The notes under the pieces were generated by a model. The model was not told the origin of the DNA. It did no database searches and saw nothing but the letters and a program-made list of their open reading frames with translations. This document shows positions 1,814 through 61,801 of a stretch of 64,000 nt of DNA, piece after piece. Every line of letters begins with the position of its first letter. The stretch's first letter is position 1. Made by a program: the position numbers and the translations under genes. Source of the DNA: Octopus sinensis (Eukaryota); assembly GCF_006345805.1 (NCBI RefSeq), contig NC_042999.1, forward strand, positions 22,630,001 to 22,694,000. Reading direction: 5' to 3'.

Positions 1814-4800
1814 ATGAAATCTGCCAAATGCAAGCTTTCTTTTCAGGTACATGACACGGCTGCCCCTCATCCCAGGGTCTCAGATGCCCACACCTCCCAC
1901 ACCCTCAGAGTTGGCACACTCAATGTTGGCACATTGAAATGTAGGTCTGGAGAGATTGTAGAGCTGCTTGAACGGAGACGTGTGGATGTATGTTGTATCC
2001 AGGAAGTAAGGTGGAGAGGAGGTTCCGCTAGGCTCCTCACAGGCAAGGAACACAGGTACAAGATTTTCTGGGCAGGGAACACTGACGGGGTCAGGGGAAT
2101 GGGTATACTTCTTGCGGAGAAATGGGTAGGTAAGGTAATCGAGGTAGTCAGAGTAAGTGACAGAGTAATTAAAATTAGATTAGTCCTTCACCACAGGACA
2201 GCTACCATCATCTCGGCATATGCCCCTCAACCAGGGCTACCGGAAGGACAAAAAGACCAATTCTATGACACCCTATTGCGAACTACCTCGTTGACAAATG
2301 ACAGTGACCTTCTCTTCATGGCAGGTGATTTCAATGGACATGTCGGGGGCTTCCATGGCGTCCATGGAGGCTACGGTTTCAGCTCTTGTAATGAGGAGGG
2401 AACCAGGCTGCTGGAATTCTGCGATGCAAATGACCTTATGGTCTGCAATACCAACTTCAGGAAACTCTCCTCTCACCTAGTCACCTACCGTTCTGGCAGA
2501 CACACCAGCCAGATTGACTACATCCTTGCCAGAAAAAGGGAAAGAGGGCTGATTATAAATGCCAAAACCTTTCCAGGCGAAGAATACACTCCTCAACATA
2601 GATTAGTAGTTAGCGACTTCAGGATCAGAGCTAAATGGTTGCCCAGAAGAAGACCTGCTTGGAGGAGAAGGGTCTGGAAGCTTAAAGATCCTGCAAATGG
2701 ACAGAGATTTAGAGACATACTACTCGAAGCCTTTGACGAAATAGAAGGGGATATAGCTTCACTTAATGTGGAAGACAACTGGAGATTTCTACGGGACAAT
2801 CTGCTGACAGCCACTGACCAGATCTGTGGATGGAGCAAAGTACCATCTCAACCCAGAGTAACATGGTGGTGGAACAATGTGGTTGACAGGGCTATTAGAC
2901 AAAAGAGACAGGCTTGGAAGGACTGGAAGAACGGTGGTAGCAGGGAATTGTATCAGACAGCCAGAAGGGAAGCTAGGAGACGGGTTTATTTAGCCAGAGG
3001 GGAAGCGGATAAGAAAAAATTTGCCAATGTTCTGCGCCGTGAGGATGAAAGACTTGAGGTATTTCGTGTTGCAAGACAGTGTGTGAGAGAGAATCGTGAT
3101 GTGGTAGGAGAGAAGTGTGTTCGCATGGATGATGGTTCACTTGCGCTAAATGAGGATGCAAAGAGAGAGGTTTGGAGATGCCACTATGAAAGGTTGCTGA
3201 ATAAAGAAAATGAATGGGATAAAGAGAGTCTGCCGAATGTTGACCCAACAGAGGGACCAGCTATCCGAGTTGATAGTTCCGTGGTAGCTAAGGCAATTAG
3301 AAGCATGAAGACAGGGAAAGCCCCAGGCTCATCAGGAATTACTGCAGAGATGCTCAAAATATCTGGCAGTGTCGGCTATAACCTAGTCACCCGTATAGTC
3401 AACCAGGTGATACACGAAGGAGTCATACCCAATGACTGGTGTAGCAGCATACTAGTCAACTGCTACAAAGGTAAAGGTGATGCCCTAGATACAAATAATT
3501 ACAGAGGTATCAAGCTGTTGGATCAGGTAATGAAGGTTACGGAGAGGGTCATAGCCCAACTAATTAGAGAGTTAGTTTAGATGAGATGCAGTTTGGGTTT
3601 GTGCCAGGGAAAAGCACCACTGATGCTATATTCCTGGTAAGGCAGCTGCAGGAGAAATACCTAGCCAAAGATAAGCCCCTGTACCTGGCTTTCGTTGACA
3701 TGGAGAAAGCCTTTGATAAGGTTCCCCGATCCCTCATCTGGTGGTCAATGAGGAAACTAGGGATAGATGAATGGCTGGTGAGGGCTGTGCAAGCCATGTA
3801 CAGAGATGCCGTAAGCAAGGTTAGGGTTGGCAACATGTACACAGAAGAATTCAAAGTAGAGGTTGGGATCCACCAGGGTTCAGTACTCAGCCCCCTCCTA
3901 TTTATCATAGTCCTCCAGGCAATAACAGGAATTCAAGACAGGTTGCCCCTTGGAGCTCCTCTATGCTGACGACCTCGCTCTAATTGCTGAGTCACTATCA
4001 GAACTGGAGGAGAAGTTCCAGGTGTGGAAGGAGGGTTTAGAATCGAGGGGCCTTAGAGTCAACCTAGCTAAAACCAAAGTACTAATAAGTAGAAAGGTAG
4101 GCAATCCACAAATGTCCTCAGGAAGATGGCCCTGCTCGATCTGTAGAAAAGGTGTAGGTAGAAACTCTATAAGATGTACCCAGTGTAAGCTATGGACACA
4201 TAAGAGGTGCAGCAATGTCAAAGGTAGGCTAACTGGGAAGATAGATTTTGTATGTGGCAGATGCTCGGGAGCATTGACCTCCGAAAATCTGCAGAAAACA
4301 ACTTCCGTCACTTTCCAAGGGGAAAAAGTAGTTGATAGCTTCCGTTATCTAGGTGACCAAGTCAGTAGTGGGGGTGGGTGCACTGAGAGTGTAACTGCTA
4401 GAATAAGAATAGCCTGGGCAAAGTTTAGGGAGCTCTTACCTCTGCTGGTGACTAAAGGCCTCTCGCTCAGAGTAAAGGGTAGACTGTATGATGCATGTGT
4501 TCGAACTGCCATGCTACATGGCAGTGAAACATGGGCCGTGACTGCTGAGGACATGCGTAAGCTCATGAGGAATGAAGCCAGTATGCTCCGATGGATGTGT
4601 AATGTCAGTGTACTTACTCGACAGAGCGTTAGTTCCCTGAGAGAAATGTTGTACCTAAGAAGCATCAGTTGTTGCGTGCAAGAGAGACGATTGCGCTGGC
4701 ATGGTCATGTGGCGAGAATGGATGAAGATAGGTGTGTGAGAAAGTGCCAATCCCTAGCAGTTGAGGGAACCCGTGGAAGAGGTAGACCCAGGAAAACCTG

Positions 4801-4909
4801 GGACGAGGTGGTGAAGCACGACCTTCGACCGTTAGGTCTCACCATGGAAATGACTAGAGACCGAGACCTATGGAAGTATGCTGTGCGTGAGAAGACCCGG
4901 CAAGACTAG
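1814..4909 (+). pseudogene. RTE ORF (APE - RT with inserted PHD-type finger), broken by two frameshifts (~3575, ~3930)
   Basis: APE motifs GTLNV, IQE, SAYAP, GDFN, QIDYIL, PQHRLV; RT motifs NYRGIKLL, QFGF, FVDMEKAFD, GIHQGSVLSP, LLYADD (YADD ~3962), FRYLG; C-terminal RGRGRPRKTW. Confidence 0.92.
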
Positions 4910-5530
4910 TGAAGCCATAACCCGTGGCCCCTACCTGGGACGTAGTCAGTCCACCTGTGCATACCTTCCTGCTTGTGACACTTGTGAAGACCTGTTGAGG
5001 CAAGTGAAAGTCAAATCAAAGTCAAATCGAATCAAGTCAAACCAAATCAAAATAGATGAACATCAATGGAATTTGTATCCTTGTGGTACCAGTGCCGGTG
5101 GCACATAAGAAAACCATCCGAACGGGACCGTAGCCAGTACCGCATCGACTGGCCTCCGTGCCGTGGGCACGTAACAAACACCATCCGATCGTAGTCGTTC
5201 GCCAGCCTCGTCTGGCACCTGTGTCGGTGGCACATAAAAAACACCATCCGAGCGTGGCCGTCTGCCAGCCTCGTCTGGCATCTGTGTCGGTGGCACATAA
5301 AAAACACCATCCGAGCGTGGCCGTCTGCCAACCTCGTCTGGCACCTGTGTCGGTGGCACATAAAATCACCCACTACACTCTTGGAGTGGTTGGCGTTAGG
5401 AAGGGCATCCAGCTGTAGAAACACTGCCAGATCTGACTGGCCTGGTACAGCCTTCGGGCTTGCCAGACCCCAGTTGAACCGTCCAACCCATGCTAGCATG
5501 GAAAGCGGACGTTAAACGATGATGATGATT
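1840..5530 (+). mobile_element. RTE-clade LINE, near full-length coding region plus long 3' UTR ending in (GAT)n
   Basis: AP endonuclease, RT and C-terminal motifs across three consecutive ORFs. 3' end is CCAACCCATGCTAGCATGGAAAGCGGACGTTAAACGATGATGATGAT. Confidence 0.95.
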
Positions 5531-11009: not shown

Positions 11010-11740
11010 ATAAGGTTTAGAAAAAAGGGGACGATACGAGGACAGACAAAACAAACATTGGGTTCAGGGTATCGAATGAGACGAAACGTATGAATAAACA
11101 AACAATTAAAACATATACAATTAAATGAGAATGAGTGATTAACAAAATATGAAGCGGAGGACGCGGTCGACCCCACAAACCACATACTCACACTAAAGAC
11201 TTTGCTTTCTCCTTTTAAATATTCTTGTTTAAACAGGTTCTTTCACTCGCAACATACTTGCTATAGACTTCCATCTTTTACGAAACACACTTTGCGACAG
11301 GCATTTCTTCTCCAGCCTTATTTTCCGTTTCATGTGGAAAACGAAAAAGTCGATTAGCTCGAGACTGGTGATAAACATGCCTGTTGCAATTCCTTTCACT
11401 CTCGTCTTCCATACTACTTCTTTCGCCATAGCAACTACCGAGAGAAAACAGGCTCGCTCCTCCCTATTCAGGGAGGTCGGCGGAACTATCTTAATTAGAG
11501 ATTCGCTCGACAGTTGTACTCTTCTCGAATGCGACAGCAGGTGTTCGACATAAGCCCAGAGTTCAGTCACCTTGGGGCATTGCACAATCGCGTGCAGGAC
11601 AGTGAAACTGTCCCTCTCACATCTTGCACAAACCGGCAAAGGTGCACACCCATGTCTAAAGAACTTATCTCAAACCGGTAAAGCTCCTACACTAACAACC
11701 GGCTGCTACTCGTTTTCAGCTGGAGAGACTCGAGAAACGT
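11010..11740 (-). mobile_element. Tx1/L1-clade LINE 3' fragment
   Basis: Minus frame GALPV*DKFFRHG..PVCARCERDSFTVLHAIVQCPKVTELW: C-terminal CCHC knuckle of L1/Tx1 ORF2, then 3' UTR. Confidence 0.8.
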
Positions 11741-13165: not shown

Positions 13166-13254
13166 TGAAAACCAATGATTCCTAAATCCTATTAACAGAC
13201 ACCCTTCTTCCTCTAATAATTAAACTCTATAAGGCTCCAGCATGGCCTATATTA

Positions 13255-13990
13255 CCTATTTCTTTACTGCCCACAAGGGGCTACACACAGAGGAGACAAA
13301 GAAGGACAGACAAACGGATTAAGTCGGTTATATCGAAACCAGTGCGTAACTGGTACTTAATTTATCGACCCCGAAAGGATGAAAGGCAAAGTCGACCTCG
13401 GCGGAATTTGAACTCAGAACGTACCGGCAGACGAAATACCTATTTCTTTACTACCCACAAGGGGCTAAACACAGAGAGGATCTCGGCGGAATTTGAACTC
13501 AGAACGTACCGGCAGACGAAATACCTATTTCTTTACTACCCACAAGGGGCTGCACACAGAGGAGACAAACAAAGACAGACAAAGGGATTAAGTCGATTAT
13601 ATCGACCCTAGTGCATAACTTGTACTTAATTTAGCGACCCCGAAAGGATGAAAGGCAAAGTCGACCTCGGCGGAATTTGAACTCAGAACGTAGCAGCAGA
13701 CGAAATACCTATTTCTTTACTACTCACAAGGGGCTAAACACAGAGAGGACCTCGGCGGAATTTGAACTCAGAACGTACCGGCAGACGAAATACCTATTTC
13801 TTTACTACCCACAAGGGGCTAAACACAGAGAGGACAAACAAAGACAGACAAAGGGATTAAGTCGATTACATCGACTCCAGTGCGTAGCTGGTACTTAATT
13901 TATCGACCCCGAAAGGATGAAAGGCAAAGTCGACCTCGGCGGAATTTGAACTCAGAACGTAACGGCAGACGAAATATGGCTACGCTTGGC
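13255..13990 (-). mobile_element. SINE family B head-to-tail array
   Basis: Repeated ~185-bp and ~90-bp units joined at GAAATACC|TATTTCTTT. Confidence 0.9.
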
Positions 13991-14099
13991 TAGACGGCGC
14001 TGCTGAATTCCCGTTCGAAAATATATAATTTTCAAAGTGACACACGGTTGCTGATCTAATAAATAGAAACATTATTATTTCTAAATCGCTCAAAGAAAA

Positions 14100-17480: not shown

Positions 17481-17929
17481 TACATACTTTATTGTTTATA
17501 AAATATACTATAAAACGGTAAATTGCTATCATGTTACTTCTACTGGTCGGCGAAGGTGGAGAATACACAAACCTCCCGTTTTCGGCTTTTCCTGCCTTGT
17601 TAGTCTTAACACATAAAGCGCGACGGGCCATGATCGTGGTCGTCAGGCACAGGTCGACAGGCTACGATCGCGACCCAGATAGAAGCATTTAATTTATGGG
17701 CATTTGTTGGGGTCTAATGTCACTCAAACGCTCCGATACCCCCCGGAATGCAAGGGGACTAATAGTTCAACTAATGACTTGCCATTATTATATACTAAGA
17801 AGATATTTTAACTATTTTTTTTTGTTTTTTATTTGTGCATGGTGGTCTCATTTTCATAAAATGTGATCAGTAGCCCATGCTATGTAAGTGTAAATCCCAG
17901 TGCTGTATGGGTTAATAATAATGATTTCA

Positions 17930-19445
17930 AGTTTTGCCACAAGGGCAGTCAATTTTGGGGGAGGGGATGAGTCGATTACATCGACCCCAGTGTTTCACTG
18001 GTACTTAATTTATCGACCTCGAAAGGATGAAAGGCAAAGTCGACCTCGGCGGAATTTAAACCCAGAACTAAGACAGACGAAATACCTATTTCTTTATTGC
18101 CCACAAGGGGCTAAACACAGAGGACAAACAAGGACAGACAAACGGATTAAGTCGATTACATCGACCTCAGTGCGTAACTGGTACTTAATTTATCGACCCC
18201 GAAAGGATGAAAAGCAAAGTCGACCTCGGCGGAATTTGAACTCAGAACATAACGGCAGACGAAATACCGCTAGGCATTTCGCCTGGCGTACTAACGTTTC
18301 TGCCAGCTCCTCGCATTTATTAGTCTCAATAATCCTTTCTACTGAAGGCCTGAAATTTGGGGTAAGAAGACATCGATTCCAGCACCCAACTGGTACTTAA
18401 TTTATCGACCCAGAAGTGATGAGGCAAAGTCGACCTCGGTAGAATTTGAACTCAGAACGTAACGGTAGCCGAAATACCTATTTCTTTATTACCCACAAGG
18501 GGCTAAACACAGAGCGGACAAACAAGGACAGACATAGGTATTAAGTCGATTACATCGACCCAGTGCGTAACTGGTACTTAATTTATCGACCCCGAAAGGA
18601 TGAAAGGCAAAGTCGACCTCGGCGGAATTTGAACTCAGAACATAACGCAGATGAAATACCTATTTCTATTTCTTTATTACCCACAAGGGGCTAAACACAG
18701 AGGACAAACAAGGACAGACATAGGTATTAAGTCGATTACATCGACCCAGTGCGTAACTGGTACTTAATTTATCGACCCCGAAAGGATGAAAGGCAAAGTC
18801 GACCTCGGCGGAATTTGAACTCAGAACATAACGCAGATGAAATACCTATTTCTATTTCTTTATTACCCACAAGGGGCTAAACACAGAGGGGACAAACAAG
18901 GACAGACATAGGTATTAAGTCGTTTACATCGACCCCAGTGCGTAACTGGTATATATTTAATCGACGCCGAAAGGATGAAAGGCAAAGTCGACCTCGGCGG
19001 AATTTGAACTCACAACGTAAAGGCAGACGAAATACCGCTAAGCATTTCGTCCGGCGTGCTAACGTTTCTGCCAGCTCGCCGCCTTTTATTAGTCTTAATA
19101 ATCCTTTCTACTGAAGGCCTGAAATTTGGGGTAAGGGGACATCGAGCACCCAACTGGTACTTAATTTATCAACCCAGAAGTGATGAGGCAAAGTCGACCT
19201 CAGCGGAATTTGAACTCAGAACGTAACGCAGCCGAAATACCTATTTCTTTATTACCCACAAGGGGCTAAACATAGAGTGGACAAACAAGGGCAGACATAG
19301 GTATTAAGTCGATTACATCGACCCAGTGCGTAACTGGTACTTAATTTATCGACCCCGAAAGGATGAAAGGCAAAGTCGACCTCGGCGGAATTTGAACTCA
19401 CAACGTAGCGGTAGCCGAAATACCGCTAAGCATTTCGCCCAGCGT
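17930..19445 (-). mobile_element. SINE family B large head-to-tail array with higher-order duplication
   Basis: Multiple ~185-bp units; the block starting near 18313 recurs near 19083. Confidence 0.9.
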
Positions 19446-21112
19446 TCTAACAAATTATTAGTCGTAATCACAGACTCTCTCTTTAACCCATAAAATATTA
19501 TTTATACTTTCACTACACATGTGGAGTCTTCGAATGTTCTTAGTTGTGTTGTTTCTTCTATAAAACACACAACAAACCGGTAATTAACACAATTTAATAA
19601 TGCTAATAATGATACTCAAGTGAAATTGTTGACATATTTGTATTTATTGGAGTAAATATAGCAAGTCGTTTCTGTGGCCTGTTTCGATTTTTATCGCTGG
19701 TCGTTTCTTTTACGTAAAGATTCGAAAACTATGGAATTATTTTTTTTACTCTCGTCTGGAAGGTTATACATATGTATACACACCCTCACACACTCTGCAG
19801 GCTGCTTATCACATGTACAATATTTATTATCTGGGTAACTGGGGAGAGAGAGAGAGAGAGAGGTAAAGGGTGTTCTACCAGGCTAGTCTTTACCAGCACA
19901 TAACTATTTTTCTTACTTTCTGTAAGTCTACAAAAAACGTAAGTCCTACTAGTTTGCTAAATAATGCCTGCTTTTTTATACATGGGGTTATTTCTTTCTG
20001 TATAACTTTTTCTACTTCAAAATCTAGCCTGTTTCTTTTTATGTTTTTCCTCTGTTTTGATTTAATTACAATTTTTTGGGGGCCTTCTTTTAGTTTCCGT
20101 CTGCCAAATCCACTCACAAGCCTTTGGTCGACCCGAGGCTATAATAGTATATGACACATTTTTGTTACTTAATTTTAATTAGTTTATAAATGAACTTGTT
20201 TTATCATCAATGTACTTATTAGCGGTCTTTCTCTGTCAGAACTTTAAATCTAACGAACATAACTTAATAATTTTGGTAAAATTTTTTTGCCTACGAAGGT
20301 TACAGTTATTTTTTTCAAAATCCGTTATTTTTAAAAAAGGATTTGTTTTATACAATAGAATAAGTTTAAAAGTTAAAAAAAAAACCCATAATCTTTAAAA
20401 GTAATTATCGTTTGTATTATGCACACATGATATTAAACAAATGCCCCTTTTCTCGACAAATGTATACGTTTGTATTAATTAGTTTTTCTCACAACAGGAA
20501 TTATGATTTTTATTCAAAATATGAAAAGGGATGTATTTTACAAAAGGAAAACAAAAGTGGTGGGAAAGAAAGAAAAAAGAAACCTCAATGCGGCACAAAA
20601 TACTTCAGTTGGTCGCACACTACAAGGTTCACCGGAACCTATTAAAACAACCCTGAAAGATCGCTGCATCACTACGGCGATGGCAAGGCTAAATAAGTTC
20701 TACCAATTTCACATTTAATGCCAGAATTGTTTCTTTAAAATTTTTCTTTTTTGTTTAAAAAGTCTGAAAATTTTTGCATCTTTCTGTCGTCCTGGACGTG
20801 AATGCCTCTTTATTTACTAAACTATCATTTTAACATGTGCTGTTATTTTTGAAAATTTTATTCTTTCTCGATGATTGAAACGGAAATCTCGGGTTAAGCT
20901 TCGAAACAGAACATCAATATTTATAAACCTAGTTCGCTTCAGATCACATCCGTGAACAGACTTTGATTAAAGTGGAAGAGACTGTTCACCGGTCGAAAAT
21001 AGGTGAATTCATTTGTTAGCTTTCTAGGCAACAGACATGTGCGTTGGCCAAATTTTATATCGCCTATGCGGCAAAATTTCGATATGAGTACCATATACAT
21101 GTCAAATGTATT

Positions 21113-21517
21113 ACTCTTTTCTCTTTTACTCTTTTACTTGTTTCAGTCATTTGACTGCGGCCATGCTGGAGCACCACCTTTAATCGAGCAAATCGACCCG
21201 GGACTTATTCTTTTGTAAGCCCAGTACTTATTCTATCGGTCTCTTTTGTCGAACCGCTAAGTAACGGGGACATAAACACACCAGCATCGGTTGTCAAGCA
21301 ATGCTAGGGGGACAAACACAGACACACAAACATACACGCACACACATATATACATATATGCGACGGGCTTCTTTCAGTTTCTGTCTACCAAATCCCACTC
21401 ACAAGGCTTTGGTCGGCTCGAGGCTATAGAAGACACTTGCCCAAGGTGCCACGTAGTGGGACTGAACCCGGGACCATGTGGTTGGTAAACAAGCTACTTA
21501 CCACACAGCCACTCCTG
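21113..21517 (-). mobile_element. SINE family A, full length
   Basis: Reverse complement of the head, linker and tail of 5776-6465. Confidence 0.9.
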
Positions 21518-23232
21518 TATTGTTTATGTTTCTTGAGAAGATCGTCGCCTTCCGTAAAAAGTTTTAATTTTTTTTTATAAATGTTGGGTGGGGGAAGGGG
21601 ATCTTTTGAAGTTGGCGTTAAAGCGAGAGACAGAGAGAGTGCGATTGGATCAGGGAAGTTCTTTTGAAGTTGGCATGCCGTGTGTGTGTGTGTGTGTTTG
21701 ATGGGGGTGTGCGAGACGGAAGGTTGGTGTGTATGTGAAGTTCTTTTGTTAGTGTGTGTGAAGAGACAAAGAGAGTAATGTTGCTGGTATGTGTGTGTGT
21801 GTGTGTGAGAGAGAGAGATAACTGAAATTTTTTAAATTCACTTTTTGTAGTGAGTGATTGACAGAGAAAAAGAGAGAGTATGTATGAATGGCTTCAGTGA
21901 CACACACATATAAACATATATATAAATAAACATAGATGGATGTATATATATATATACACACACACATGTATGTATAGATGCGGGAGGGGCTGCAATTCTT
22001 TCCTACGGTTAATATGGTTATTTAGTAAACAAGTTTTCTCCTTTATAAGAAAACTCCAACGAATGAAAATGTTAAACATACATAGGCATAGGAGTGGCTG
22101 TGTGGTAAGTAGCTTGCTTACCAACCACATGGTTCTGGGTTCAGTCCCACTGCGTGAGACCTTGGGCAAGTGTCTTCTACTATAGCCTCGGGCACGCAAG
22201 TTGTTATGTATGTATACATAGAGTAATACACACATTACTCTCTCTGTCTCTTCACACACACACTAACAAAAGCACTTCACATACACACCACACTTTTTGT
22301 CTTGCACACCCCCATCAAACACAAACACACTCACACACAGGCACGCACATCAATTCTTTCGCTTCACGCCAACTTCAAAAGAACTTCCCTCATACAATCA
22401 TGCTCTCTCTGTCTCTTTCGCTTTCCCTCCAACTTCAAAAGATCCCCCTTCCTCAGCAAACCTATATGTAAAAACACAATTTTTTTTTTACTGAAACCGA
22501 CGATCTTCACAAATGTAAATAAATACACGTGGTTTATGACAGTCGTGTGACTAGTATCATAAGATCGCCCCATTTACCTAATAGAGGAACAATTCTCTCC
22601 ATTTTCTTGCTTACTAGTGTTGTTGTTATATATATATAATGTATTGAGTATTAAAGGAAGTAGTGAGTACTTAGTATGAAAGATTAAGAAAATGAGAGAG
22701 ACTGAAACAACGTGTTAACGATACAAGATACTTTATTCGACTGCCGTTGTTGTACAAGTTAATTGTTTTGGCGGGAAACAAAGTGAAAGTCCTTTTATCA
22801 AGGGAGACAATGGGCGACGTTGATTGTTCATGTTTGTTGTGATGATTATATAACAACTAGAACCTTGATCTTTGCCAAGTTAACCTTAAGACTCTTTGAT
22901 TCCAGGTTTTGCTTCCACACCTGGAATTTTCTAGCTCTGTTACAGAATCTGCTATAAGAGCAAGGTCGTAAGCATATAACAGTTCTCAAGGGTAGCCAGC
23001 CCTGAATTTTTCTGTTATGATCTGGAGGATAATAATGAATTGGAGGGGACTGAGAACTGAACCCTGATGAACACATACCTGTACACTAAATTCATCACTA
23101 TACTCATGGCTACTCTCCCCTTTCTGACAGATCCCCTGTACATGGCTTGTCTGACTTTCACAAACCACTCGTCTACCCTTAGCTTCCTCAGAGTCCACCA
23201 CATCATACAGTGGGGTACTCTGTCAAAGGTTT

Positions 23233-23661
23233 TGTAGTGACGCTATCTTGGAAATCTGCTGCATGCATGCGCAGAGTTGGATTCTTCCGGGAGGCCTGCC
23301 GGAAGTTCCCGCATGCGCAGAAAACTAGCAGCAGCAAAATTTCCCTCGTATCAGCCTCTCGGACGTTGACAGCCGAATAGGACAGACGTGTTTTATCAGC
23401 TCTCTCAAGCTGCCACCTCGTGGTGTTGCTACGCTATGCTTGAACGGACAGGATTTGGCTTACTCCACTTGACTACTGCAACAAGCTCCTAGGCTGTCCA
23501 TTCGCCCTGAAGAAGAATGTATATATATTGCGGATCCAGAAATAAAATACTTATGCTGTTGAAGTTAATCGGAAGTCTTAACTCTTTCCTTCGATTAATA
23601 TTTTAATGGAAAGGATGAGAGCTGCACCCATCCAGTGTTATGGACCTTTCATCCTGTTACA
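23233..23661 (+). mobile_element. 429-bp LTR-like insert (TG...CA) within the RTE relic
   Basis: Starts TGTAGTGA, ends TGTTACA, AATAAA at ~23541; followed by TGGTGACCCC (PBS-like, or diverged RTE). No target duplication is visible. Confidence 0.5.
23264..23319. promoter_or_regulatory. Symmetric NRF1-ETS-ETS-NRF1 promoter-like module
   Basis: TGCATGCGCA (23264-73), CTTCCGG (23284-90), CCGGAAGT (23299-306), CGCATGCGCA (23310-19); locally CpG-rich. Confidence 0.55.
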
Positions 23662-24289
23662 ATTGGTGACCCCAAACACCGAGTACATTGGTTTATTCCT
23701 GGCCAAATATTTCTGCAGTTGTCTGACTATAAAGATAGCATCAATAGTGCTTCTCCCTTGCACAAAGCCAAACTGTATTTAATTTAATCTGATTTTGCTT
23801 CTAATTAACTGGGCTGTTAATTAGCTCTTTCTGTAACTTCCACGACCTGGTCCAGCAACTTGATGCCTCTGTAATTACTTCCAAGCTATCTCCTTACCTT
23901 GTAGCTGCTGACGGTAATGTTGCTATACCAGTCATTGGGATGACACCTTCCTGAATAACCTGATTAACTATATGGGTGATTAGACTGTACCTTGCACCTC
24001 CAGATATTTTAAGTATCTCTGTGATTCTCAATGGGACAGAGACAACCTCTTGATGTACAAAAATTTAAAAAAAACTAAAAAGGTCAAGAGGTATACTTAT
24101 CTATCACCCACCGGTTCTCTTGACATAGATTTTGACATTTTTATCTTGTCCTGACTTCTCTGTTCAATTCAACTCACCGCTGTGGTGGAGTTGACTTGGA
24201 AAATACTGGGGTGGTTCATTCGATTAAAATGTCCTTCAATGCAATGCCACAGCATGACTTAAGACTAATGAGTGAAACAAATAGAAGAT

Positions 24290-25087: not shown

Positions 25088-25487
25088 ATCATCATCATCA
25101 TCATCGTTTAACGTCCGCTTTTCATGGGTTGGACAATTTTGACTGAGGGCTGGCGAACCAGATGGCTGCACCAGGCTCCAATCTTGATCTGGCGGAGTTT
25201 CTACAGCTGGATGCCCTTCCTAACGCCAACCACTCTGAGAGTGTATTGGGTGCTTTTTACGTGCCACTGGCACGGGGGCCAGTCAGGCGGTACTGGCAAT
25301 GACCTTGCTCGAATCTTTTTACGCATGCCACCGGCACAGGTACCATTAAGGCGACGCTGGTAACGATCACGCTTGAATGGTGCCCTTTTACGTGCGGTGC
25401 CCTTTTACGTGCGGTGCCCTTTTACGTGCCACCGGCATTGAAGCCAGTTAGCCGCTCTGGCAATGATTACGCTTGGATGGTGCGTAT
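25088..25487 (-). mobile_element. RTE 3'-UTR-type truncated copy
   Basis: (CAT)n CGTTTAACGTCCGC...TGCCCTTCCTAACGCCAAC plus 61-bp-type repeats. Confidence 0.85.
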
Positions 25488-25699
25488 TAAATATAAAGGA
25501 ACTACACGTGTTTCAGTATTGGAAGATTACAATGTATATATATATATATATTAATATTGAATTTTATCAGATACTTTGTATATTTATAGATAAGTATATA
25601 AATATACGATAAATAAGACCCCAAAGCACGATATGGAGATGCATATAACGCTGAAGGGTTGCACCTGATTGATTTGGAAATTTGTTTTCCCAAATTATT

Positions 25700-26125
25700 T
25701 CATCATCATCATCATCATCATCGTTTAACGTCTGCTTTCCATGCTAGCATGGGTTGGATGGTTCAACTGGGGTCTGGGAAGCCCGAAGGCTGCACCAGGA
25801 TAGTCAGATCTGGCAGTGTTTCTACAGCTGGATGCCCTTCCTAATGCCAACCACTCCGTGAGTGTAGTGGGGGATTTTTATGTGCCACGACACAGGTGCC
25901 AGACGAGGCTGGTGAACGGCCATGCTCGGATGGTGCTTTTTATGTGCCACCGACACAGGTGCCAGACGAGGCCTGCGAACGGCCACGCTCGGATAGTGTT
26001 TTTTATGTGCCACCGACACAGGTGCCAGACGAGGCTGGTGAACAGCCATGTTCGGATGGTGTTTTTTATGTGCCACCAACACAGGTGCCAGACGAGGCTG
26101 GCACGGCCACGATCGGATAGTGTTT
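25700..26125 (-). mobile_element. RTE 3'-UTR-type truncated copy with about four 61-bp repeats
   Basis: Reverse complement of 5160-5530. Confidence 0.9.
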
Positions 26126-26581: not shown

Positions 26582-26742
26582 AATAATAATAATAATTGAT
26601 TCTTGTGTATGTTTATACATGCAAATATGTATGTACATTTAAGTGTAGGTATATGTATATGTATGTATATGTATAAGTATGTATATGTGTGTGTATTTAA
26701 TGTGAAGTTTTTTCTTCGTCTTTTTCCACTTTTATTAGCACT

Positions 26743-27060
26743 ATGAGTAAAAACGTTACAATCCCATCTGAGAACAAGCAAGGTGATTGCCCTGGAGTGC
26801 TGACTGGAGATCCAGCAAAGACAAAACGGGGCCTCATTGTTCTCCAAGAATGGTGGGGAATGAACCAACAAATTCAAGATGAAGCTGCTGACTTAGCTTC
26901 AAGAGGGCCATTTGTTACCCTAGTTCCTGACCTGTATCGTGGTAAGCTGGCAACTGATAATGAGGAAGCTGGTCATCTGATGAACAACCTTGACTGGGAA
27001 GGTGCCATTCAAGATATTCAGGGATGTGCCAAGTACTTACTTAATTTAGGATGTAAGAAG
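26743..27060 (+). CDS. Dienelactone hydrolase-family (carboxymethylenebutenolidase/Usf-like) hydrolase, coding exon 1 (aa 1-106)
   Basis: Acceptor TTTTATTAG ends 26738, ATG 26743. Motifs GLIVLQEWWG (E36) and LVPDLYRG. Donor AAG|GTGAGC at 27060/27061, phase 0. Confidence 0.92.
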
Positions 27061-27239: not shown

Positions 27240-28218
27240 GTGTGTTTCTACAGCTAGATGCCCTTCCTAATGCCAACCACTCCGAGAGTGTAGTGGGTGC
27301 TTTTACGTGCCACTGGCATGAGGGCCAGTCAGGTGGTACTGGCAGTGGCTATGCTCAAATGTTGTTTTTTACGTGTCACCTGCACAGGAGCCAGTCCAGC
27401 GGCACTGGCAATGACCTCACTCAAATGTTTTTTCGCATGCCAGTAAGGCGACGCTGGTAACGACCATGCTTGAATGGTGCTTTTTACATTTTACTAAATT
27501 CTTTGTTATTTTCAAAATTAATTTAAACAATTAGCTGGAAAATGAGACCCCAAAGTATTGAAACATGGTAACGAAAGGTTTAAGTAGTCAAGAACAGAAA
27601 ATTGGCATGGTTGTGTTGCTAAGAAGTTTGTTTCCCAACTATACGGTTTTGGCATCAGTTTCAACTGTGTTGCATTTTGGACAAGTGTCTTCTACTATAG
27701 CCCTTGGCTGACCAAATCTTGTGAATGAATTTGGTTTATGGAAATTGAAAGAAACCTGTAATATGTGTGTGTGTGTGTGTGTGCTTGTATCTCCTTGTCC
27801 AGACATTGCATGATTGTTGTAACAGAATGTCACTGTCATACAAGCATTGTCCATTCATCATCATCATCATCATCGTTTACCGTCCATTTTCCATGCTAGC
27901 ATGGGTTGGACGATTTGACTGAGGACTGGTGAACCAGATGGCTGCACCAGGCTCCAATCTTGATCTGGCAGAGTTTCTTCAGCTGGATGCCCTTCCTAAC
28001 GTCAACCACTCCGTGAGTGTAGTGGGTGCTTTTTATGTGCCAGGGGAGGCTGGCAACAGCCACGATTGGTTGGTGGTTTTTACGTGCCACCAACATGGAA
28101 GCCAGTCAAGGCGGCACTAGTATTGGCCATGTACGGATGGTGCTTTTTATGTGCCAGGGGAGGCTGGCAACGGCCACGAACGGTTGGTGCCTTTTACGTG
28201 CCACCGGCACGGAACATG
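27240..28218 (-). mobile_element. Intronic repeats: two antisense RTE-3'UTR-type copies (27240-27485, 27855-28218) and a decayed SINE A (~27603-27850, +)
   Basis: TGCCCTTCCTAA..CCAACCACTCC motifs, (CAT)n tail and SINE body ACAAGTGTCTTCTACTATAGCC. Confidence 0.8.
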
Positions 28219-28521
28219 CCACATTTTCAATATTCTGTAAGAATGTGTCTGACTTTGGTGAAATATTACATTGCTTGGAAATTGGTGAGGGTTGGCAACA
28301 GGAAGATGTCTAAAGAACATCTGCTTTAATAAACTTCATCTGATCCATGCAAACATAGAGGTGTGGACATGAAAGTGATGATAACACCGGCTGTTATGAC
28401 TTACTGCATATTTTTTTGTAACTGCTTCTCCTTACCTGACCATTTTAACCTTATTTGTTTTTTTGCAGAATTCTAATGAAAATTTCAGCATTAATTAATT
28501 CAAATTTTATTTGATTGGCAG

Positions 28522-28887
28522 ATTGGTGTCACTGGGTTTTGCATGGGTGGAGCCCTGGCCTTTGCTTCTGCTGTCCGTGTACCAGAAATCAACGCTTCTG
28601 CACCCTTTTATGGAATTCCTGGTGAAGCTATTGCAGATGTAACGAAGATCAAGATTCCTCTGCAGTGCCATTTTGGTAAAAACGACAACGTGGTTGGTTT
28701 CTCATCTCCAGTCGAACAGGAGGCTGTCCGCAAGAAGCTAGATAATGCTAAAGTAAAACATGAATTCCATGTTTATGATGCTGGGCATGCGTTTACCAAT
28801 ACTACATCGCCAGGATTTCACAAGGAATCATGTGACCTTGCCCTTGGTCGTTTAATTAAATTTATGAATGAGAACTTACAAGCATGA
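28522..28887 (+). CDS. Dienelactone hydrolase-family hydrolase, coding exon 2 (aa 107-227)
   Basis: GGCAG|ATT GGT GTC ACT GGG TTT TGC ATG GGT GGA gives IGVTGFCMGG (nucleophile Cys113), HFGKND (acid), YDAGHAF (His). In frame with exon 1; TGA ends 28887. Confidence 0.92.
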   Translation: MGVTGFCMGGALAFASAVRVPEINASAPFYGIPGEAIADVTKIKIPLQCHFGKNDNVVGFSSPVEQEAVRKKLDNAKVKHEFHVYDAGHAFTNTTSPGFHKESCDLALGRLIKFMNENLQA

Positions 28888-35990: not shown

Positions 35991-36230
35991 TATAGCCACT
36001 TGTAATTACATGCTGCTTCAATTGCGCATATCAGATATAAGTTTGCGCGTGTGTATGTATACATACATGCACATACAGGCACACAAACTCACACACAGAG
36101 GCGTAAGTATAGCTATGTTAACAAGCTCGCTTTAAGTTTCAGGTTCGATCCTTCTGTAGGGCATCACTTCTTAAATATACTTGCTGATGTAGCGTGGCTG
36201 TTTTCAGCCATTTTGAAATATGACTATAGT

Positions 36231-37700
36231 GGTCTCTATGTAGTTCGCGCCACTGGTTGACATGTGACACGAGGGTCTCTACGTAGTTCGCGCCACTGGT
36301 TGACATGTGACATGAGGGTCTCTACGTAGTTCGCGCCACTGGTTGACATGTGACACGAGGGTCTCTACGTAGTTCGCGCCACTGGTTGACATGTGACACG
36401 AGGGTCTCTACGTAGTTCGCGCCACTGGTTGACATGTGACACGAGGGTCTCTACGTAGTTCGCGCCACTGGTTGACATGTGACACGAGGGTCTCTACGTA
36501 GTTCGCGCCACTGGTTGACATGTGACACGAGGGTCTCTACGTAGTTCGCGCCACTGGTTGACATGTGACACGAGGGTCTCTACGTAGTTCGCGCCACTGG
36601 TTGACATGTGACACGAGGGTCTCTACGTAGTTCGCGCCACTGGTTGACATGTGACACGAGGGTCTCTACGTAGTTCGCGCCACTGGTTGACATGTGACAC
36701 GAGGGTCTCTACGTAGTTCGCGCCACTGGTTGACATGTGACACGAGGGTCTCTACGTAGTTCGCGCCACTGGTGACATGTGACACGAGGGTCTCTACGTA
36801 GTCCGCGCCACTGGTTGACATGTGACACGAGGGTCTCTACGTAGTCGCGCCACTGGTTGACATGTGACACGTGGGTCTCTACGTAGTTCGCGCCACTGGT
36901 TGACATGTGACACGAGGGTCTCTACGTAGTTCGCGCCACTGGTTGACATGTGACACGAGGGTCTCTACGTAGTTCGCGCCACTGGTTGACATGTGACACG
37001 AGGGTCTCTACGTAGTTCGCGCCACTGGTTGACATGTGACACGAGGGTCTCTACGTAGTTCGCGCCACTGGTTGACATGTAACACGAGGGTCTCTACGTA
37101 GTCCGCGCCACTGGTTGACATGTGACACGAGGGTCTCTACGTAGTTCGCGCCACTGGTTGACATGTGACACGAGGGTCTCTACGTAGTCCGCGCCACTGG
37201 TTGACATGTGACACGAGGGTCTCTACGTAGTTCGCGCCACTGGTTGACATGTGACACGAGGGTCTCTACGTAGTTCGCGCCACTGGTTGACATGTGACAC
37301 GAGGGTCTCTACGTAGTTCGCGCCACTGGTTGACATGTGACACGAGGGTCTCTACGTAGTTCGCGCCACTGGTTGACATGTGACACGAGGGTCTCTACGT
37401 AGTTCGCGCCACTGGTTGACATGTGCCACGAGGGTCTCTACGTAGTCCGCGCCACTGGTTGACATGTTACACGAGGGTCTCTGCGTAGTTCGCGCCACTG
37501 GTTGACATGTGACACGAGGGTCTCTACGTAGTTCGCGCCACTGGTTGACATGTGACACGAGGGTCTCTACGTAGTTCGCGCCACTGGTTGACATGTGACA
37601 CGAGGGTCTCTACGTTGTCCGCGCCACTGGTTGACATGTGACACGAGGGTCTCTACGTAGTCCGCGCCACTGGTTGACACGTGACGCGAATTGTCTCGAC
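36231..37700 (+). repeat. Tandem array of ~34 copies of a 43-bp unit
   Basis: Unit TAGTTCGCGCCACTGGTTGACATGTGACACGAGGGTCTCTACG, period 43 (36241 to 36284), very homogeneous, no spacers. Confidence 0.97.
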
Positions 37701-38545: not shown

Positions 38546-39084
38546 AAGATAAAACACCAGCGTTTAGAAGCGGGTTCCAGTACTGCAACTTCTGTTTCAC
38601 AGATAAATTTCATATCCGCTACCTACTTCAAACTCGAACAAAAAAGAAGGATAAGCTTATTTCGACCTGACGACATATACACTAATCCCTTCTCGTGACC
38701 TTTAAAACAGATCCCTGACATATGTTGTAAAGCTATTGAAGTCAGAGATGACAGAATTATGTGAAAGTATTGATTGCTATTTAACAGTTGAAATATTATC
38801 AATCATTCCTTTTCAACACGTGGAGCTGTGCAGTCCAGCAAAACGTCGATTGACAGACACACTGATTCAAATTCATAACGCTTCTCACACTTTTTCTCAG
38901 TCTCTACCTCTCTTTCTCTCTGTGTCTCTGTCTCTCTTTCCTCTTCTGTCTCTCTCTCTCTCACACACACACTCACTCTCTATCTCTATCTCTGTTCTTG
39001 TCTTCTATCTCTCACATATAATTATATACATATATGCATGCACACACACTTGCTCATTCTACATACACATATACATACATAAAT

Positions 39085-39480
39085 GCGGCGAGCTGGCAGA
39101 ATCGTTAGCACGCCGGGCGAAATGCTTAGCAGTATTTTGTCTGCCGTTACGTTCTGAGTTCAAATTCCGCCGAGGTCGACTTTGCCTTTCATCCTTTCGG
39201 GGTCGATAAATTAAGTACCAGTTACGCACTGGGGTCGATATAATCGACTTAATCCATTTGTCTGTCCTTGTTTGTCCTCTCTGTGTTTAGCCCCTTGTGG
39301 GTAGTAAAGAAATAGGTATTTCATCTGCCGCTACGTTCTGAGTTCAAATTCTGCCGAGGTCGCGGGGTCGATTAAATAAGTACCAGTTACGCACTGAGGT
39401 CGATATAATTGACTTTATCCGTTTGTCTGTCTTTGTTTGTAACTCTGTGTGTAGCCCCTTATGGGCAGTAAAGAAATAAG
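39085..39480 (+). mobile_element. SINE family B (head plus second unit)
   Basis: GCGGCGAGCTGGCAGAATCGTTAGCACGCCGGGCGAAATGC head, B box GAGTTCAAATTCC. Confidence 0.9.
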
Positions 39481-39964
39481 AAACATACACATGTACATAC
39501 ATACACACACATATTTACACACACATACGTACACAAATTCATACATGCATATATTTATGGTTATACACACACAACACACAGAGAAAAACAAACACACACG
39601 CACAAACATCCTCACAAACACTCACACAATCACAGACACACAAACGTTTGTGAACTCGTTGATACATCAATAATCGCACAAACAGCAGTCGCAAAGTTGA
39701 AAGCTATTTCCATATCATATTCTTTCAAGATCCAAGTAAATTGGAAACAGTATTAAGCGATAGGATATCGTAACAAATGTTGTTTCTCTAACGAAATAAG
39801 TCAAAGCTGCCCTCCAGCCAAGAAGGCAATCACATCATCTGTTGCACGATGGAAGTATTATTCTGAGAAAGTTCTCCGCGTTTGGTAGAGATCAATCGGT
39901 TGGCTTGGCTAGAAATCCCAGGCTTGTTTGCTATGTGATAACACAAACACAGTACACCTGTTTA

Positions 39965-40352
39965 TTACCTGTTTCTTTACTACCCACAAGGGGCTAAACA
40001 CAGAGGGGACAAACAAGGACAGACAAATTATATCGACTCCAGTGCATAACTGGTACTTATTTAATCGACCCCGCGACCTTGGCGGAATTTGAACTCAGAA
40101 AGTAAAGACAGACGAAATACCTATTTCTTTACTACCCACAAGGGGCTAAACACAGAGAGGACAAACAAGGATAGACAAACGGATTAAGTCGATTATATCG
40201 ACCCCAGTGCGTAACTGGTACTTAATTTATCGACCCCGAAAGGATGAAAGGCAAAGTCGACATCGGCGGAATTTGAACTCCGAACGTAACGGCAGACGAA
40301 ATACTGCTAAGCATTTCGCCCGGCGTGCTAACGTTTCTGCCAGCTCGCCGCC
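39965..40352 (-). mobile_element. SINE family B dimer
   Basis: Reverse complement of the 39085 type. Confidence 0.9.
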
Positions 40353-40434
40353 TTAACACTTGTTTAATACCAATGCCCCTTTCGTGTGTGTGTATGTGCT
40401 TGTGTTTTTGTGAATCTGTACGTAATGGGCTGTG

Positions 40435-45182: not shown

Positions 45183-46307
45183 CAAAAATTCAACATATAA
45201 AAATTTCTCAACCGTGGGCCAGTCCACCTAAATATAATTTTGGAGAAATCCCACACGAAAAGCCCGAATGTCTCTGCCATTTCCTAGGCTTCATAAGTGC
45301 CTTCTCCCCGTTTCTTTCCTTACTACATCGGGTAAACTTATTCAAACTCAACATTCTTGCCACTCTCATCCACTCTTTCGCTAAACACGAAATAAACATT
45401 TATGAATAAGAAATTGATTTATGTTTACGTAAAAACAAAAACAATAATAATAACAATAATAATAATAATAATACAATGGTAACTCAAGCGAGAAGAATCG
45501 ATTATATACTTTCCTAACAAATTTATAACCTCGTGACGATCGGAGTCGAGTAGCGAGCGGATCGATCTTAACCAACTGTATCGTCGTCTCACCTTCACAT
45601 TCTGTTGAGACCGTATGTCTATGTGAGAAATGAGTATTCAAAATACTTTCGTATCTTATTTATAAGTTAATTTTTGTTTTTTTTCTTCTTTATTTTCTCG
45701 TTATTGCTGTTGTATTTTTTTTGTTTTGGTTGTGTTTGTTACGGTTGCTGCTTTGGCTGTTGTTTCCAAAGCTATTTTCAGTCCGTTCATTAACGTATTC
45801 AGATACACCAGAATACAATTCTTCCAAATGCTTAATCTTCAGCTTCAGCTTCATGATTCCGTATTTTCTCTTGATCTATTCGTTTCCAAATTTTTTGTGC
45901 TCTGCCGAAGAATTGAATATTATGTTTGTTACGCTTCGCTTGGTTTAGAGCTAAAAGCTAAACAGAGATCAGCGTTGCGTTTTTGATAAAGTTATTCATT
46001 CAAATCTTCTTCTATCTCTTGTTCACCAGTGTGTTTAAAAATGCAATTTCCTTATTTTCCATTTCCATTGGGAACTAGATAACTGGATAAAGTTAGATAT
46101 ATCTTAGAGAGATTTTCATCTTTTTCTCAGGTTTTGAATGAGAATATCATATTCATACAAATATCAACAACAACAGTTGCAAATATATTGATTTTGAATC
46201 TTACGAGGGTGCAGACTTCAAGACAGTATTTAACCAGGTCGATAGGGTATCGGATTTACGATTTGAAGGGTCGAAGATCATATCTCAATATCACGCTGTA
46301 TCTTAAA

Positions 46308-49321: not shown

Positions 49322-49920
49322 ATTTCTTTATTGCCCACAAGAGGCTAAACATAGAGAGGACAAACAAGGACAGACAAAAGGATTAAGTCGATTACATCGA
49401 CCCCAGTGCGAAACTAGTACTTTATTTATCGACCCCGAAAGGATGAAAGGCAAAGTCGACCTCGGCAGAATTTGAACTCAGAACGTAACGACAGACGAAA
49501 TACCTATTTCTTTACTACCCTCAAGGGGCTAAACATAGAGTGGACAAACAGGGACAGACAAAGGGATTAAGTCGATTACATCGACCCCAGTGCGTTACTG
49601 GTACTTAAATTATCGACCCCAAAAGGATGAAAGACAAAGTCGACCTCGGCAGAATTTGAACTCAGAACGTAACGACAGACGAAATACCTATTTCTTTACT
49701 ACCCACAAGAGGCTAAACATAGAGTGGACAAACAGGGACAGACAAAGGGATTAAGTCGATTACATCGACCCCAGTGCGTTACTGGTACTTAAATTATCGA
49801 CCCCAAAAGGATGAAAGACAAAGTCGACCTCGGCAGAATTTGAACTCAGAACGTAACGGCGGACGAAATACTGCTAAGCGTTTCGCCTGGCGTGCTAACG
49901 TTTCTGCCAGTTCGCCGCCT
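49322..49920 (-). mobile_element. SINE family B trimer
   Basis: Three ~183-bp units; the last two are nearly identical. Confidence 0.9.

Positions 49921-61765: not shown

Positions 61766-61800
<35 letters not shown>

Positions 61801-61801
<1 letters not shown>

What the first reader, a model, noticed from the sequence alone, without database searches (positions are those of the whole stretch)
23233..23661. LTR-like insert with symmetric NRF1/ETS sites splits an old RTE and may be the DLH gene's recruited promoter
Seen: the RTE pieces on either side rejoin almost base-for-base when 23233-23661 is removed, so the insert is younger than the RTE. It is bounded by TG...CA and holds NRF1-ETS-ETS-NRF1 motifs in inverted symmetry. 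DLH coding exon 1 begins at a splice acceptor 4 nt before ATG, so an upstream non-coding exon should exist. Established: NRF1 and ETS sites mark housekeeping and bidirectional promoters. Inference: promoter capture from a mobile element.
Basis: partly seen in the sequence, partly recalled or inferred. Interest (0 to 1): 0.7.

Follow-up and report, generated by a model that had tools for sequence, protein, structure and literature searches.

The report
Young promoter-like insert in octopus intron
A 434-base DNA piece with a tight cluster of housekeeping-promoter motifs entered an old jumping-gene remnant in an octopus gene's first intron after Octopus sinensis/vulgaris split from O. bimaculoides; it is real and recent, but it lacks LTR hallmarks, and the exons that relatives splice to the coding exon lie 3.3 kb further upstream, so its role as the gene's promoter is unproven.

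Summary
The window is Octopus sinensis chromosome CM016861.1:22630001-22694000. The orthologous O. bimaculoides locus has the LINE reverse-transcriptase remnant uninterrupted. O. sinensis and O. vulgaris both carry a 434-nt insert (23234-23667) in place of 6 nt of it. The insert holds a 22-nt ETS palindrome flanked by two identical 11-nt NRF1-like repeats, about 1e-9 likely by chance in 64 kb. The acceptor 4 nt before the DLH ATG is real, because O. bimaculoides isoforms X1 and X2 splice into it.

There is no target-site duplication and 6 nt of target are missing. The TG...CA ends do not coincide with the junctions. No second copy occurs in about 190 kb of octopus DNA. So "LTR" is not supported.

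The exons that relatives join to 26739 map to window 19.5-19.94 kb. Their donors are largely conserved there (one is lost in O. vulgaris), 3.3 kb upstream of the insert. The O. vulgaris gene model, which has the insert, also uses that region. The insert has no good plus-strand donor; two strong donors lie on the minus strand.

The perfect O. sinensis/O. vulgaris identity over the motifs belongs to a 2.45-kb low-divergence tract, so it does not show constraint. The insert is at most an untested alternative or bidirectional intronic promoter. Interest is modest.

The parts
23234..23667 (.). Lineage-specific insert, 434 nt. Present in O. sinensis and O. vulgaris and absent in O. bimaculoides, where 6 nt 'ctctaa' occupy the site.
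23265..23275 (+). NRF1-like site 1 (GCATGCGCAGA; 8/10 match to GCGCATGCGC)
23284..23305 (.). 22-nt palindrome CTTCCGGGAGGCCTGCCGGAAG, which is two inverted ETS/GABP-type CCGGAAG cores
23311..23321 (+). NRF1-like site 2 (GCATGCGCAGA; cCGCATGCGC is 9/10), a perfect direct repeat of site 1
23668..24019 (-). LINE RT remnant, upstream piece (...IQFGFVQGRSTIDAIFIVRQLQKYLARNKPMYSVFGV)
22855..23233 (-). LINE RT remnant, downstream piece (KTFDRVPHCMMWWTLRKL...HQGSVLSP...YAYDLALI...), with a frameshift and a stop
26737..26738 (+). Splice acceptor AG. The exon starts at 26739, 4 nt before the ATG. Identical in three octopus species.
26743..27060 (+). DLH ('protein usf-like', PF01738) coding exon 1, with donor AAG|GTGAGC
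28522..28887 (+). DLH coding exon 2 through the stop codon
19524..19579 (+). Ortholog of the O. bimaculoides isoform X2 upstream exon. Donor CCG|GTAATT is conserved. The O. bimaculoides ATG is lost here through a 10-nt deletion.
19750..19938 (+). Ortholog of the O. bimaculoides isoform X1 upstream exon (approximate start). Donor TCT|GTAAGT follows 19921. The second donor AAC|GTAAGT follows 19938 and is the one used by the O. vulgaris model.
23079..23079 (-). Last exon base of a strong minus-strand donor, CAG|GTATGT (9.6 bits), about 200 nt from the motif cluster. A second one, CAG|GTGTGG, lies at 22921.
   Evidence: approximate PWM taken from general knowledge
20929..23381 (.). Low-divergence tract between O. 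sinensis and O. vulgaris, about 0.2% against 2-5% around it. It contains a 714-nt identical run (22668-23381) that ends 60 nt past NRF1-like site 2.

Best explanation
The segment is a 434-nt piece of foreign DNA. It entered an already dead, antisense-oriented LINE (APE+RT, RTE-like) remnant inside the long 5'-UTR intron of the dienelactone-hydrolase ('usf-like') gene. This happened after the O. sinensis/O. vulgaris lineage split from O. bimaculoides and before those two species separated.

The junctions show a 6-nt target loss and no duplication. That fits an end-joining or fragment-capture event, or a transposon copy later truncated at one end, better than integrase-mediated LTR insertion (inference).

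Its 5' 90 nt carry a compact TATA-less module: an NRF1-like site, an inverted ETS pair and a second NRF1-like site. This is most likely a copied housekeeping-type promoter core.

The exons that relatives splice to the coding exon lie upstream, ending at 19579, 19921 and 19938, so the gene's transcription presumably starts at or before about 19.5 kb and the insert sits in the intron. If the insert is active, it most likely works as a weak, orientation-independent intronic promoter. On the plus strand it could give an alternative DLH 5' exon, which would need a donor at 23913 or beyond. On the minus strand it could give an antisense transcript using the strong LINE-derived donor at 23079.

Shown: the insertion, its timing, the motifs, and where relatives' upstream exons map. 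Inferred: the insertion mechanism and any promoter activity.
For: Empty site in O. bimaculoides and filled sites in O. sinensis and O. vulgaris.
No TSD and a 6-nt loss.
Non-random motif cluster.
O. bimaculoides X1 and X2 N-termini map to L001 10001-10057 and 10242-10416, equivalent to window 19524-19579 and about 19750-19921. Both read into 'c act ATG'.
Donors A and C and the acceptor are conserved in all three species; donor B (after 19921) is kept in O. sinensis and O. bimaculoides but lost in O. vulgaris.
The O. vulgaris model CAI9719078.1 enters DLH from the 19938 donor, not from the insert.
No plus-strand donor of at least 5.5 bits lies inside the insert, while strong minus-strand donors lie at 23079 and 22921.
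The intron is 2.16 kb in O. bimaculoides against 6.8 kb here, with at least 4 lineage-specific length differences, so insertions are routine in this intron.
Against: No transcript 5' ends or junctions could be examined for O. sinensis. It has four mRNA variants with the same CDS whose 5' exons I could not see.
The upstream exons look weakly constrained. O. sinensis lost the X2 ATG. O. vulgaris has a 61-nt deletion in exon A and a GT>AT change in donor B. Local divergence there is 3-5%. This leaves room for promoter turnover towards the insert.
The motif cluster is 100% identical between O. sinensis and O. vulgaris.
A low-copy LTR or other TE family cannot be excluded without a whole-genome search.
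Confidence: 0.6

Rival explanations
1. One reading: a solo LTR whose U3 promoter has been captured as the (main) promoter of the DLH gene, with a new non-coding first exon spliced to 26739.
For: TG...CA and a 4-nt TGTA/TACA are present at 23233-4 and 23660-1.
The promoter-type motif cluster lies near one end, with TATATATA (23521-30) and AATAAA (23542-47) further in.
The insert lies upstream of a real acceptor.
The upstream ancestral exons show decay in O. sinensis and O. vulgaris.
Against: There is no target-site duplication; after removing TG...CA the site is 1 nt shorter than the empty site.
The junctions defined by the empty site do not coincide with TG/CA.
No second copy was found in about 190 kb.
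There is no plus-strand donor of at least 5.5 bits inside the insert.
Gene models in O. bimaculoides (no insert) and O. vulgaris (insert present) use exons at 19.5-19.94 kb.
Confidence: 0.1
2. Inert passenger: the motif cluster is only a relic of the DNA the fragment was copied from. In this intronic, LINE-embedded context it is silent and evolving neutrally.
For: The 3' two-thirds of the insert diverges at about 6% between O. sinensis and O. vulgaris.
The identity over the motifs belongs to a 2.45-kb low-divergence tract that also covers SINE-like repeats and microsatellites. That pattern is typical of local genealogy rather than constraint.
No structured RNA (z = +0.95 and -0.76), no Rfam hit and no Pfam hit.
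The only other inferred octopus promoter region I could scan, the head-to-head PDCL3/NUP42-like gene starts in L003, has none of these exact motifs.
Against: In animals where they have been studied, an NRF1-like/ETS/ETS/NRF1-like cluster with intact CpGs is usually active (general knowledge, not tested here).
All 10 CpGs of the first 150 nt are retained in both species.
Confidence: 0.4
3. A new antisense or bidirectional promoter: the module fires mainly leftwards. This would make a lineage-specific non-coding RNA whose first exon and splice donor are supplied by the antisense strand of the LINE remnant.
For: Strong minus-strand donors CAG|GTATGT (23079) and CAG|GTGTGG (22921) lie 180-340 nt from the cluster.
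The 714-nt identical run extends leftwards from the cluster.
A palindromic ETS pair has no intrinsic direction.
Against: No called gene on the minus strand within 16.7-38.9 kb.
The identical run is part of a larger low-divergence tract.
The donor scores come from an approximate PWM.
There is no RNA evidence.
Confidence: 0.2

Closest known systems
TE/LTR-derived alternative promoters of host genes (for example ERV LTR-driven first exons in mammals)
   Same: A young inserted sequence upstream of a coding exon carries its own transcription-factor site cluster. It could donate a new first exon to a gene that already has a promoter.
   Different: No LTR hallmarks passed testing (no TSD, no copies, junctions not at TG/CA). 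No transcript evidence. No usable plus-strand donor inside the insert.
NRF1 / GABP(ETS) TATA-less bidirectional housekeeping promoters of vertebrates
   Same: The motif vocabulary and tight spacing match. An inverted ETS pair is flanked by NRF1-type GCATGCGC sites. The block is locally GC-richer (54%) and its CpGs are intact.
   Different: It is not at the 5' end of any annotated gene and sits inside an intron and a LINE remnant. The NRF1-like sites are 8/10 and 9/10 matches. Whether these motifs mark promoters in octopus was not shown here; the one inferred octopus bidirectional promoter region I scanned lacks them.
Filler-DNA or captured-fragment insertions at end-joined double-strand breaks (NUMT-type events)
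   Same: A single insertion without target duplication, with a small (6-nt) target deletion and elevated mismatch in the 14 nt next to one junction.
   Different: The source locus is unknown and no microhomology is evident. A truncated transposon copy would look the same.
RTE-clade LINEs of Octopus (RTE-2_OV; PMC9115989)
   Same: The host element is a LINE RT remnant. It is 57% identical over the RT to a neighbouring LINE of about 1030 aa that has an APE and RT layout but is broken into three ORF pieces (window 1814-4909).
   Different: Clade placement was not tested. The remnant is truncated at both the 5' and 3' ends (about 735 nt) and carries a frameshift and a stop.

Membership tests
solo LTR | Target-site duplication of 4-6 bp flanking the element | tested here: not met
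   Empty site from O. bimaculoides: aaggtttt|ctctaa|gacaac. The filled site has no repeated flank. Removing TG...CA leaves the site 1 nt short, and removing 23234-23667 leaves a 6-nt loss.
solo LTR | 5'-TG...CA-3' termini with a terminal inverted repeat at the true junctions | tested here: inconclusive
   TG at 23233-4 and CA at 23660-1, with only 4 nt TGTA/TACA. The T of TG is accounted for by the flank, and 6 nt (attggt) after CA are not target sequence.
solo LTR | Other copies in the genome (solo, or paired around gag-pol) | not testable with these tools
   No copy in the window, L001, L003 or L004 (about 190 kb). An exact 22-mer scan of metagenomes gave one chance hit in a bacterial gene. 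No octopus whole-genome DNA search is available.
NRF1/ETS housekeeping or bidirectional promoter | Clustered NRF1 and ETS/GABP motifs beyond chance | tested here: met
   2 of 3 GCATGCGC and 2 of 6 CCGGAAG in the 64-kb window fall within 57 nt. The shuffle means of 0.66 and 2.59 per window give about 1e-9 by my estimate.
NRF1/ETS housekeeping or bidirectional promoter | Transcription start sites or open chromatin at the cluster | not testable with these tools
   No transcript contigs carry this gene for O. sinensis or O. vulgaris in the collections.
NRF1/ETS housekeeping or bidirectional promoter | Selective conservation of the motif block | tested here: inconclusive
   Identity between O. sinensis and O. 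vulgaris is 100%, but within a 2.45-kb tract of about 0.2% divergence with sharp edges. The block is absent in O. bimaculoides.
First exon / promoter of the DLH gene | The exon spliced to the acceptor at 26739 originates in the segment | tested here: not met
   In O. bimaculoides (X1, X2) and O. vulgaris (CAI9719078.1) the exon joined to 'c act ATG' maps to window 19524-19579, about 19750-19921, or the donor at 19938. This was tested on relatives' gene models, not on O. sinensis RNA.
First exon / promoter of the DLH gene | A usable 5' splice site downstream of the putative start within the segment | tested here: not met
   No plus-strand GT site of at least 5.5 bits lies in 23234-23667. The first ones are at 23913 (5.6) and 24587 (6.6). 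The PWM is approximate.
RTE-clade LINE (host element) | Reverse-transcriptase domain | tested here: met
   Fragment: RVT_1 at E = 0.045 only. However, it is 55-79% identical over RT motifs to the LINE at 1814-4909, whose pieces hit RVT_1 at 2e-15.
RTE-clade LINE (host element) | Single ORF with an N-terminal APE endonuclease and phylogenetic placement in the RTE clade | not tested
   The related copy has Exo_endo_phos plus RVT_1 over about 1030 aa in three ORF pieces, which is consistent with RTE. No clade phylogeny was run.

The most novel reading that the evidence does not exclude
Within the last 13-33 million years or less, a ready-made NRF1/ETS bidirectional promoter cassette was pasted into a dead LINE inside the DLH 5'-UTR intron of the O. 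vulgaris/O. sinensis lineage. It now fires in one or both directions. It would give DLH a new alternative first exon while the ancestral upstream exons decay, and/or create a lineage-specific antisense RNA whose first exon and donor come from the LINE's antisense strand. That would be a datable birth of a promoter with a clean empty-site outgroup.
Probability: 0.2. Interest if true: 0.5.

Novelty: new member of a known kind. Interest (0 to 1): 0.3.

Why it matters
If the insert is active, it would be a clean and datable case of promoter gain by insertion in a cephalopod. An empty-site outgroup (O. bimaculoides) and two filled sister species are available for comparison. That would be useful for asking how the repeat-rich octopus genome rewires gene 5' ends. 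If it is silent, which is at least as likely, it is one more lineage-specific insertion in an intron that tripled in length. Its main lesson would then be that promoter-like motif clusters can be carried around as passengers.

Tried and rejected
- Rfam at E<=1 over 20-30 kb found only low-complexity miRNA-like noise and nothing in the insert.
- ARAGORN found no tRNA or SINE head.
- RNA folding of both strands showed no excess structure.
- The internal ~191-nt duplication hinted at by a 21-nt repeat scored no better than shuffles.
- Pfam on the insert's ORFs found nothing.
- A search for other copies in the window, the O. bimaculoides locus, the upstream O. sinensis locus and the O. vulgaris locus found none.
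- An exact scan of metagenome contigs with the 22-nt palindrome gave one hit inside a bacterial protein-coding gene (apparently glutamate synthase), which is chance.
- CpG observed/expected is uninformative in this genome: 0.82 for the window and 0.91 for the insert's first 150 nt.
- The PDCL3/NUP42-like head-to-head promoter region, intended as a positive control for NRF1/ETS motifs in octopus promoters, has no exact motif.
- I first read the 714-nt identical run as constraint on the promoter. I rejected that after binning showed a 2.45-kb low-divergence tract.
- A literature search for cephalopod NRF1 promoter motifs found nothing relevant.
- Looking up transcript contigs that carry the exact DLH protein returned only the genome record.

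Full report
**Where the window comes from.** The DLH protein assembled from the two coding exons (26743-27060 and 28522-28887) is exactly XP_029634060-63 'protein usf-like' of Octopus sinensis. It is encoded on GCA_006345805.1 CM016861.1. Locus coordinates place the window at CM016861.1:22630001-22694000, plus strand. The best outside hit is O. bimaculoides 'protein usf' (92% identity, PF01738 DLH).

**Is the insert real and younger than the LINE?** Yes.
- I fetched the O. bimaculoides orthologous locus (L001). blastn aligns window 23067-23233 to L001 11487-11642 (88%) and window 23673-24095 to L001 11654-12071 (89.7%).
- At the site L001 reads ...ctgtcaaaggtttt|ctctaa|gacaacaaaagccaagtacattgg.... 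On the minus strand this is an uninterrupted RT frame, IQFGFVQGWGSTVDAIFIVRQLQKYLARNKPMYLAFVVLEKTFDRVLHCMTWW....
- In the window the same frame is cut between ...KPMYSVFGV and KTFDRVPHCMMWW....
- A related LINE in the same window (1814-4909) reads KPLYLAFVDMEKAFDKVPR across that point.
Removing 23234-23667 leaves a clean 6-nt deletion. 'Rejoins almost base-for-base' is therefore correct.
- The O. vulgaris assembly (L004, GCA_951406725.2) has the insert at the same place (45751-46182, 95.9% identity).
- The insertion thus postdates the O. bimaculoides split, given as 13.3-33.5 Mya in PMC13282606. It predates the O. sinensis/O. vulgaris split. The LINE remnant is older than the O. bimaculoides split.

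**What is the host element?** The remnant (24019 to 22855, minus strand, about 735 nt without the insert) covers the RT from upstream of motif A to just past YADD. It has one frameshift and one stop. On its own it reaches only RVT_1 at E = 0.045. It is 55-79% identical, block by block, to the LINE at 1814-4909, whose three ORF pieces carry Exo_endo_phos and RVT_1 at 2e-15 over about 1030 aa. That layout agrees with the RTE-type LINEs described in octopus (PMC9115989). I did not run a clade phylogeny, so 'RTE' is plausible but untested.

**Is it an LTR?** The evidence is against it.
- There is no target-site duplication. Six target nucleotides are missing, and the next 14 nt match O. bimaculoides at only 9-10 of 14.
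The terminal inverted repeat is 4 nt.
- No other copy occurs in the window, L001, L003 or L004, about 190 kb in all. That sample is far too small to exclude a low-copy family in a genome that size.
- The segment is not a tRNA-type SINE. It has no Rfam match, no excess RNA structure, no internal duplication and no Pfam-detectable coding remnant.
- The junction anatomy fits end-joining capture of a fragment, or a transposon copy that later lost one end together with a few flank bases. This is inference.

**The motif cluster.** It is real and non-random.
- GCATGCGC occurs three times in 64 kb, twice here at 23265 and 23311; the shuffle mean is 0.66.
- CCGGAAG occurs six times, twice here at 23284(-) and 23299(+); the shuffle mean is 2.59.
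- From those rates, four such hits within 57 nt anywhere in the window has an expectation near 1e-9 (my calculation).
- The ETS pair forms a 22-nt palindrome, CTTCCGGGAGGCCTGCCGGAAG. The NRF1-like sites are a perfect 11-nt direct repeat, GCATGCGCAGA. The arrangement is therefore only partly 'inverted'.
- The first 150 nt of the insert are 54% GC against 42% for the rest. CpG observed/expected is unremarkable in this weakly CpG-depleted genome.

**Does DLH need an upstream exon, and where is it?**
- The acceptor ccacttttattAG|cactATG is identical in the three species.
- O. bimaculoides isoform X2 (MSTNILSCVVSSIRHTTKR|TMSKN...) and isoform X1 (...THNYFSYFL|TMSKN...) both read across it.
- Their upstream coding parts map to L001 10001-10057 and 10242-10416. 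These align to window 19524-19579 and about 19750-19921.
- The donors are CCG|GTAATT after 19579, TCT|GTAAGT after 19921 and AAC|GTAAGT after 19938.
- The O. vulgaris protein CAI9719078.1 is a PDCL3-DLH fusion model. It enters DLH through ...CLHKT|TMSKN, that is, from the 19938-type donor. The neighbouring donor B is mutated GT>AT in that species.
In one species without the insert and one with it, however, the models place that exon 3.3-3.7 kb upstream of the insert. The insert then lies inside the intron: 3312 nt after donor B and 3071 nt before the acceptor.
- That intron is 2156 nt in O. bimaculoides and 6817 nt here, with at least four separate length differences. Insertions in it are commonplace.

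**Could the insert still be a promoter?**
- A rough donor PWM (frequencies from general knowledge) scores known donors at 6.9-11.4 bits. It finds none of at least 5.5 bits on the plus strand inside the insert. The first are ACG|GTAATG at 23913 and ACT|GTGAGT at 24587.
- On the minus strand, strong donors CAG|GTATGT (23079) and CAG|GTGTGG (22921) lie in the LINE remnant, 180-340 nt from the cluster.
- Between O. sinensis and O. vulgaris, the longest identical run in about 30 kb of synteny is 714 nt (22668-23381). It is longer than either DLH exon and ends 60 nt beyond the second NRF1-like site. The rest of the insert then diverges at about 6%.
- This run sits in a 2.45-kb tract (20929-23381) with only five scattered mismatches plus one microsatellite. 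The tract covers SINE-like repeats too and is flanked by 3-5% divergence. A local genealogy effect (recent shared ancestry with a recombination edge) explains this at least as well as constraint on a promoter. I do not count it as functional evidence.
- The upstream exons look loosely constrained. O. sinensis lost the X2 ATG, and O. vulgaris has a 61-nt deletion and lost donor B. That is normal for 5' UTR exons but also leaves room for promoter turnover.
- No transcript contigs for this gene from O. sinensis or O. vulgaris were available, so the question cannot be settled here.

**Verdict.** The LTR label is not supported. 'The DLH gene's recruited promoter' is weakened, because an older exon region that explains the acceptor exists upstream and is the one used in relatives' models. 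An alternative or bidirectional intronic promoter remains possible: about 0.2 for each of the plus-strand alternative-exon and antisense readings (which overlap), against 0.4 for a silent passenger. This is a new instance of a known kind of event, and interest is modest until RNA 5' ends are mapped.

Noticed in passing
window 1814-4909 (+): Near-full-length LINE of about 1030 aa in three ORF pieces (588, 127 and 319 aa) broken by two frame disruptions. It has an APE endonuclease, RT and a PHD/C1-like zinc finger after the RT. An ETS core (CCGGAAG) lies at 1689, just upstream of its ATG.
   Followed up: partly
L004 26454-26480, 42403-42417, 49538 (O. vulgaris): The O. vulgaris protein CAI9719078.1 (474 aa) fuses PDCL3 with DLH across about 23 kb, via what appears to be a 12-nt micro-exon (tctacacaaaac). 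This is probably an annotation artefact or a read-through model. It also causes the 90% protein cluster to mix phosducin-like and DLH proteins.
   Followed up: partly
window 20929-23381: A 2.45-kb tract of about 0.2% divergence between O. sinensis and O. vulgaris. It has sharp edges against 3-6% on both sides, and the right edge falls inside the insert at 23381/23382. It could reflect a shared haplotype, introgression, gene conversion or a sweep.
   Followed up: partly
window 13200-14030, 17900-19450, 39080-40355, 49260-49920, 61770-62010, 63620-63820: CpG-rich SINE-like repeat units of about 184 or 269 nt, in tandem arrays and inverted pairs (for example 329-nt arms at 95% identity, 39082-39410 and 40026-40354). 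The array at 17.9-19.45 kb abuts the conserved DLH upstream exon, so the ancestral 5' end is itself next to repeat DNA.
   Followed up: no
window 36100-37700: Tandem array of a 43-nt unit with more than 33 copies at 94-99% identity. It is GC-rich (52%) and also present in O. vulgaris.
   Followed up: no
window 5040-5500, 25120-26120, 27240-28320: A repeat family that translates to FLQLDALPNANHS... occurs in both orientations around the DLH exons. It also accounts for part of the intron length difference with O. bimaculoides.
   Followed up: no
L001 about 11300-11486 (O. bimaculoides): A run of N (assembly gap) cuts the O. bimaculoides copy of the LINE remnant. The left part of the element (window 22855-23066) therefore cannot be compared.
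   Followed up: yes
window 28879-28887: DLH in O. sinensis and O. vulgaris ends ...NENLQA*. O. bimaculoides and both Argonauta hians paralogues end ...NENL/...NDNL, so there is a two-residue C-terminal extension in this lineage.
   Followed up: no
window 19534 region; L004 42040-42060: Relative to O. bimaculoides, O. sinensis has a 10-nt deletion that removes the isoform-X2 start codon. O. vulgaris has a 61-nt deletion in the same upstream exon and a GT>AT change in the X1 donor.
   Followed up: partly
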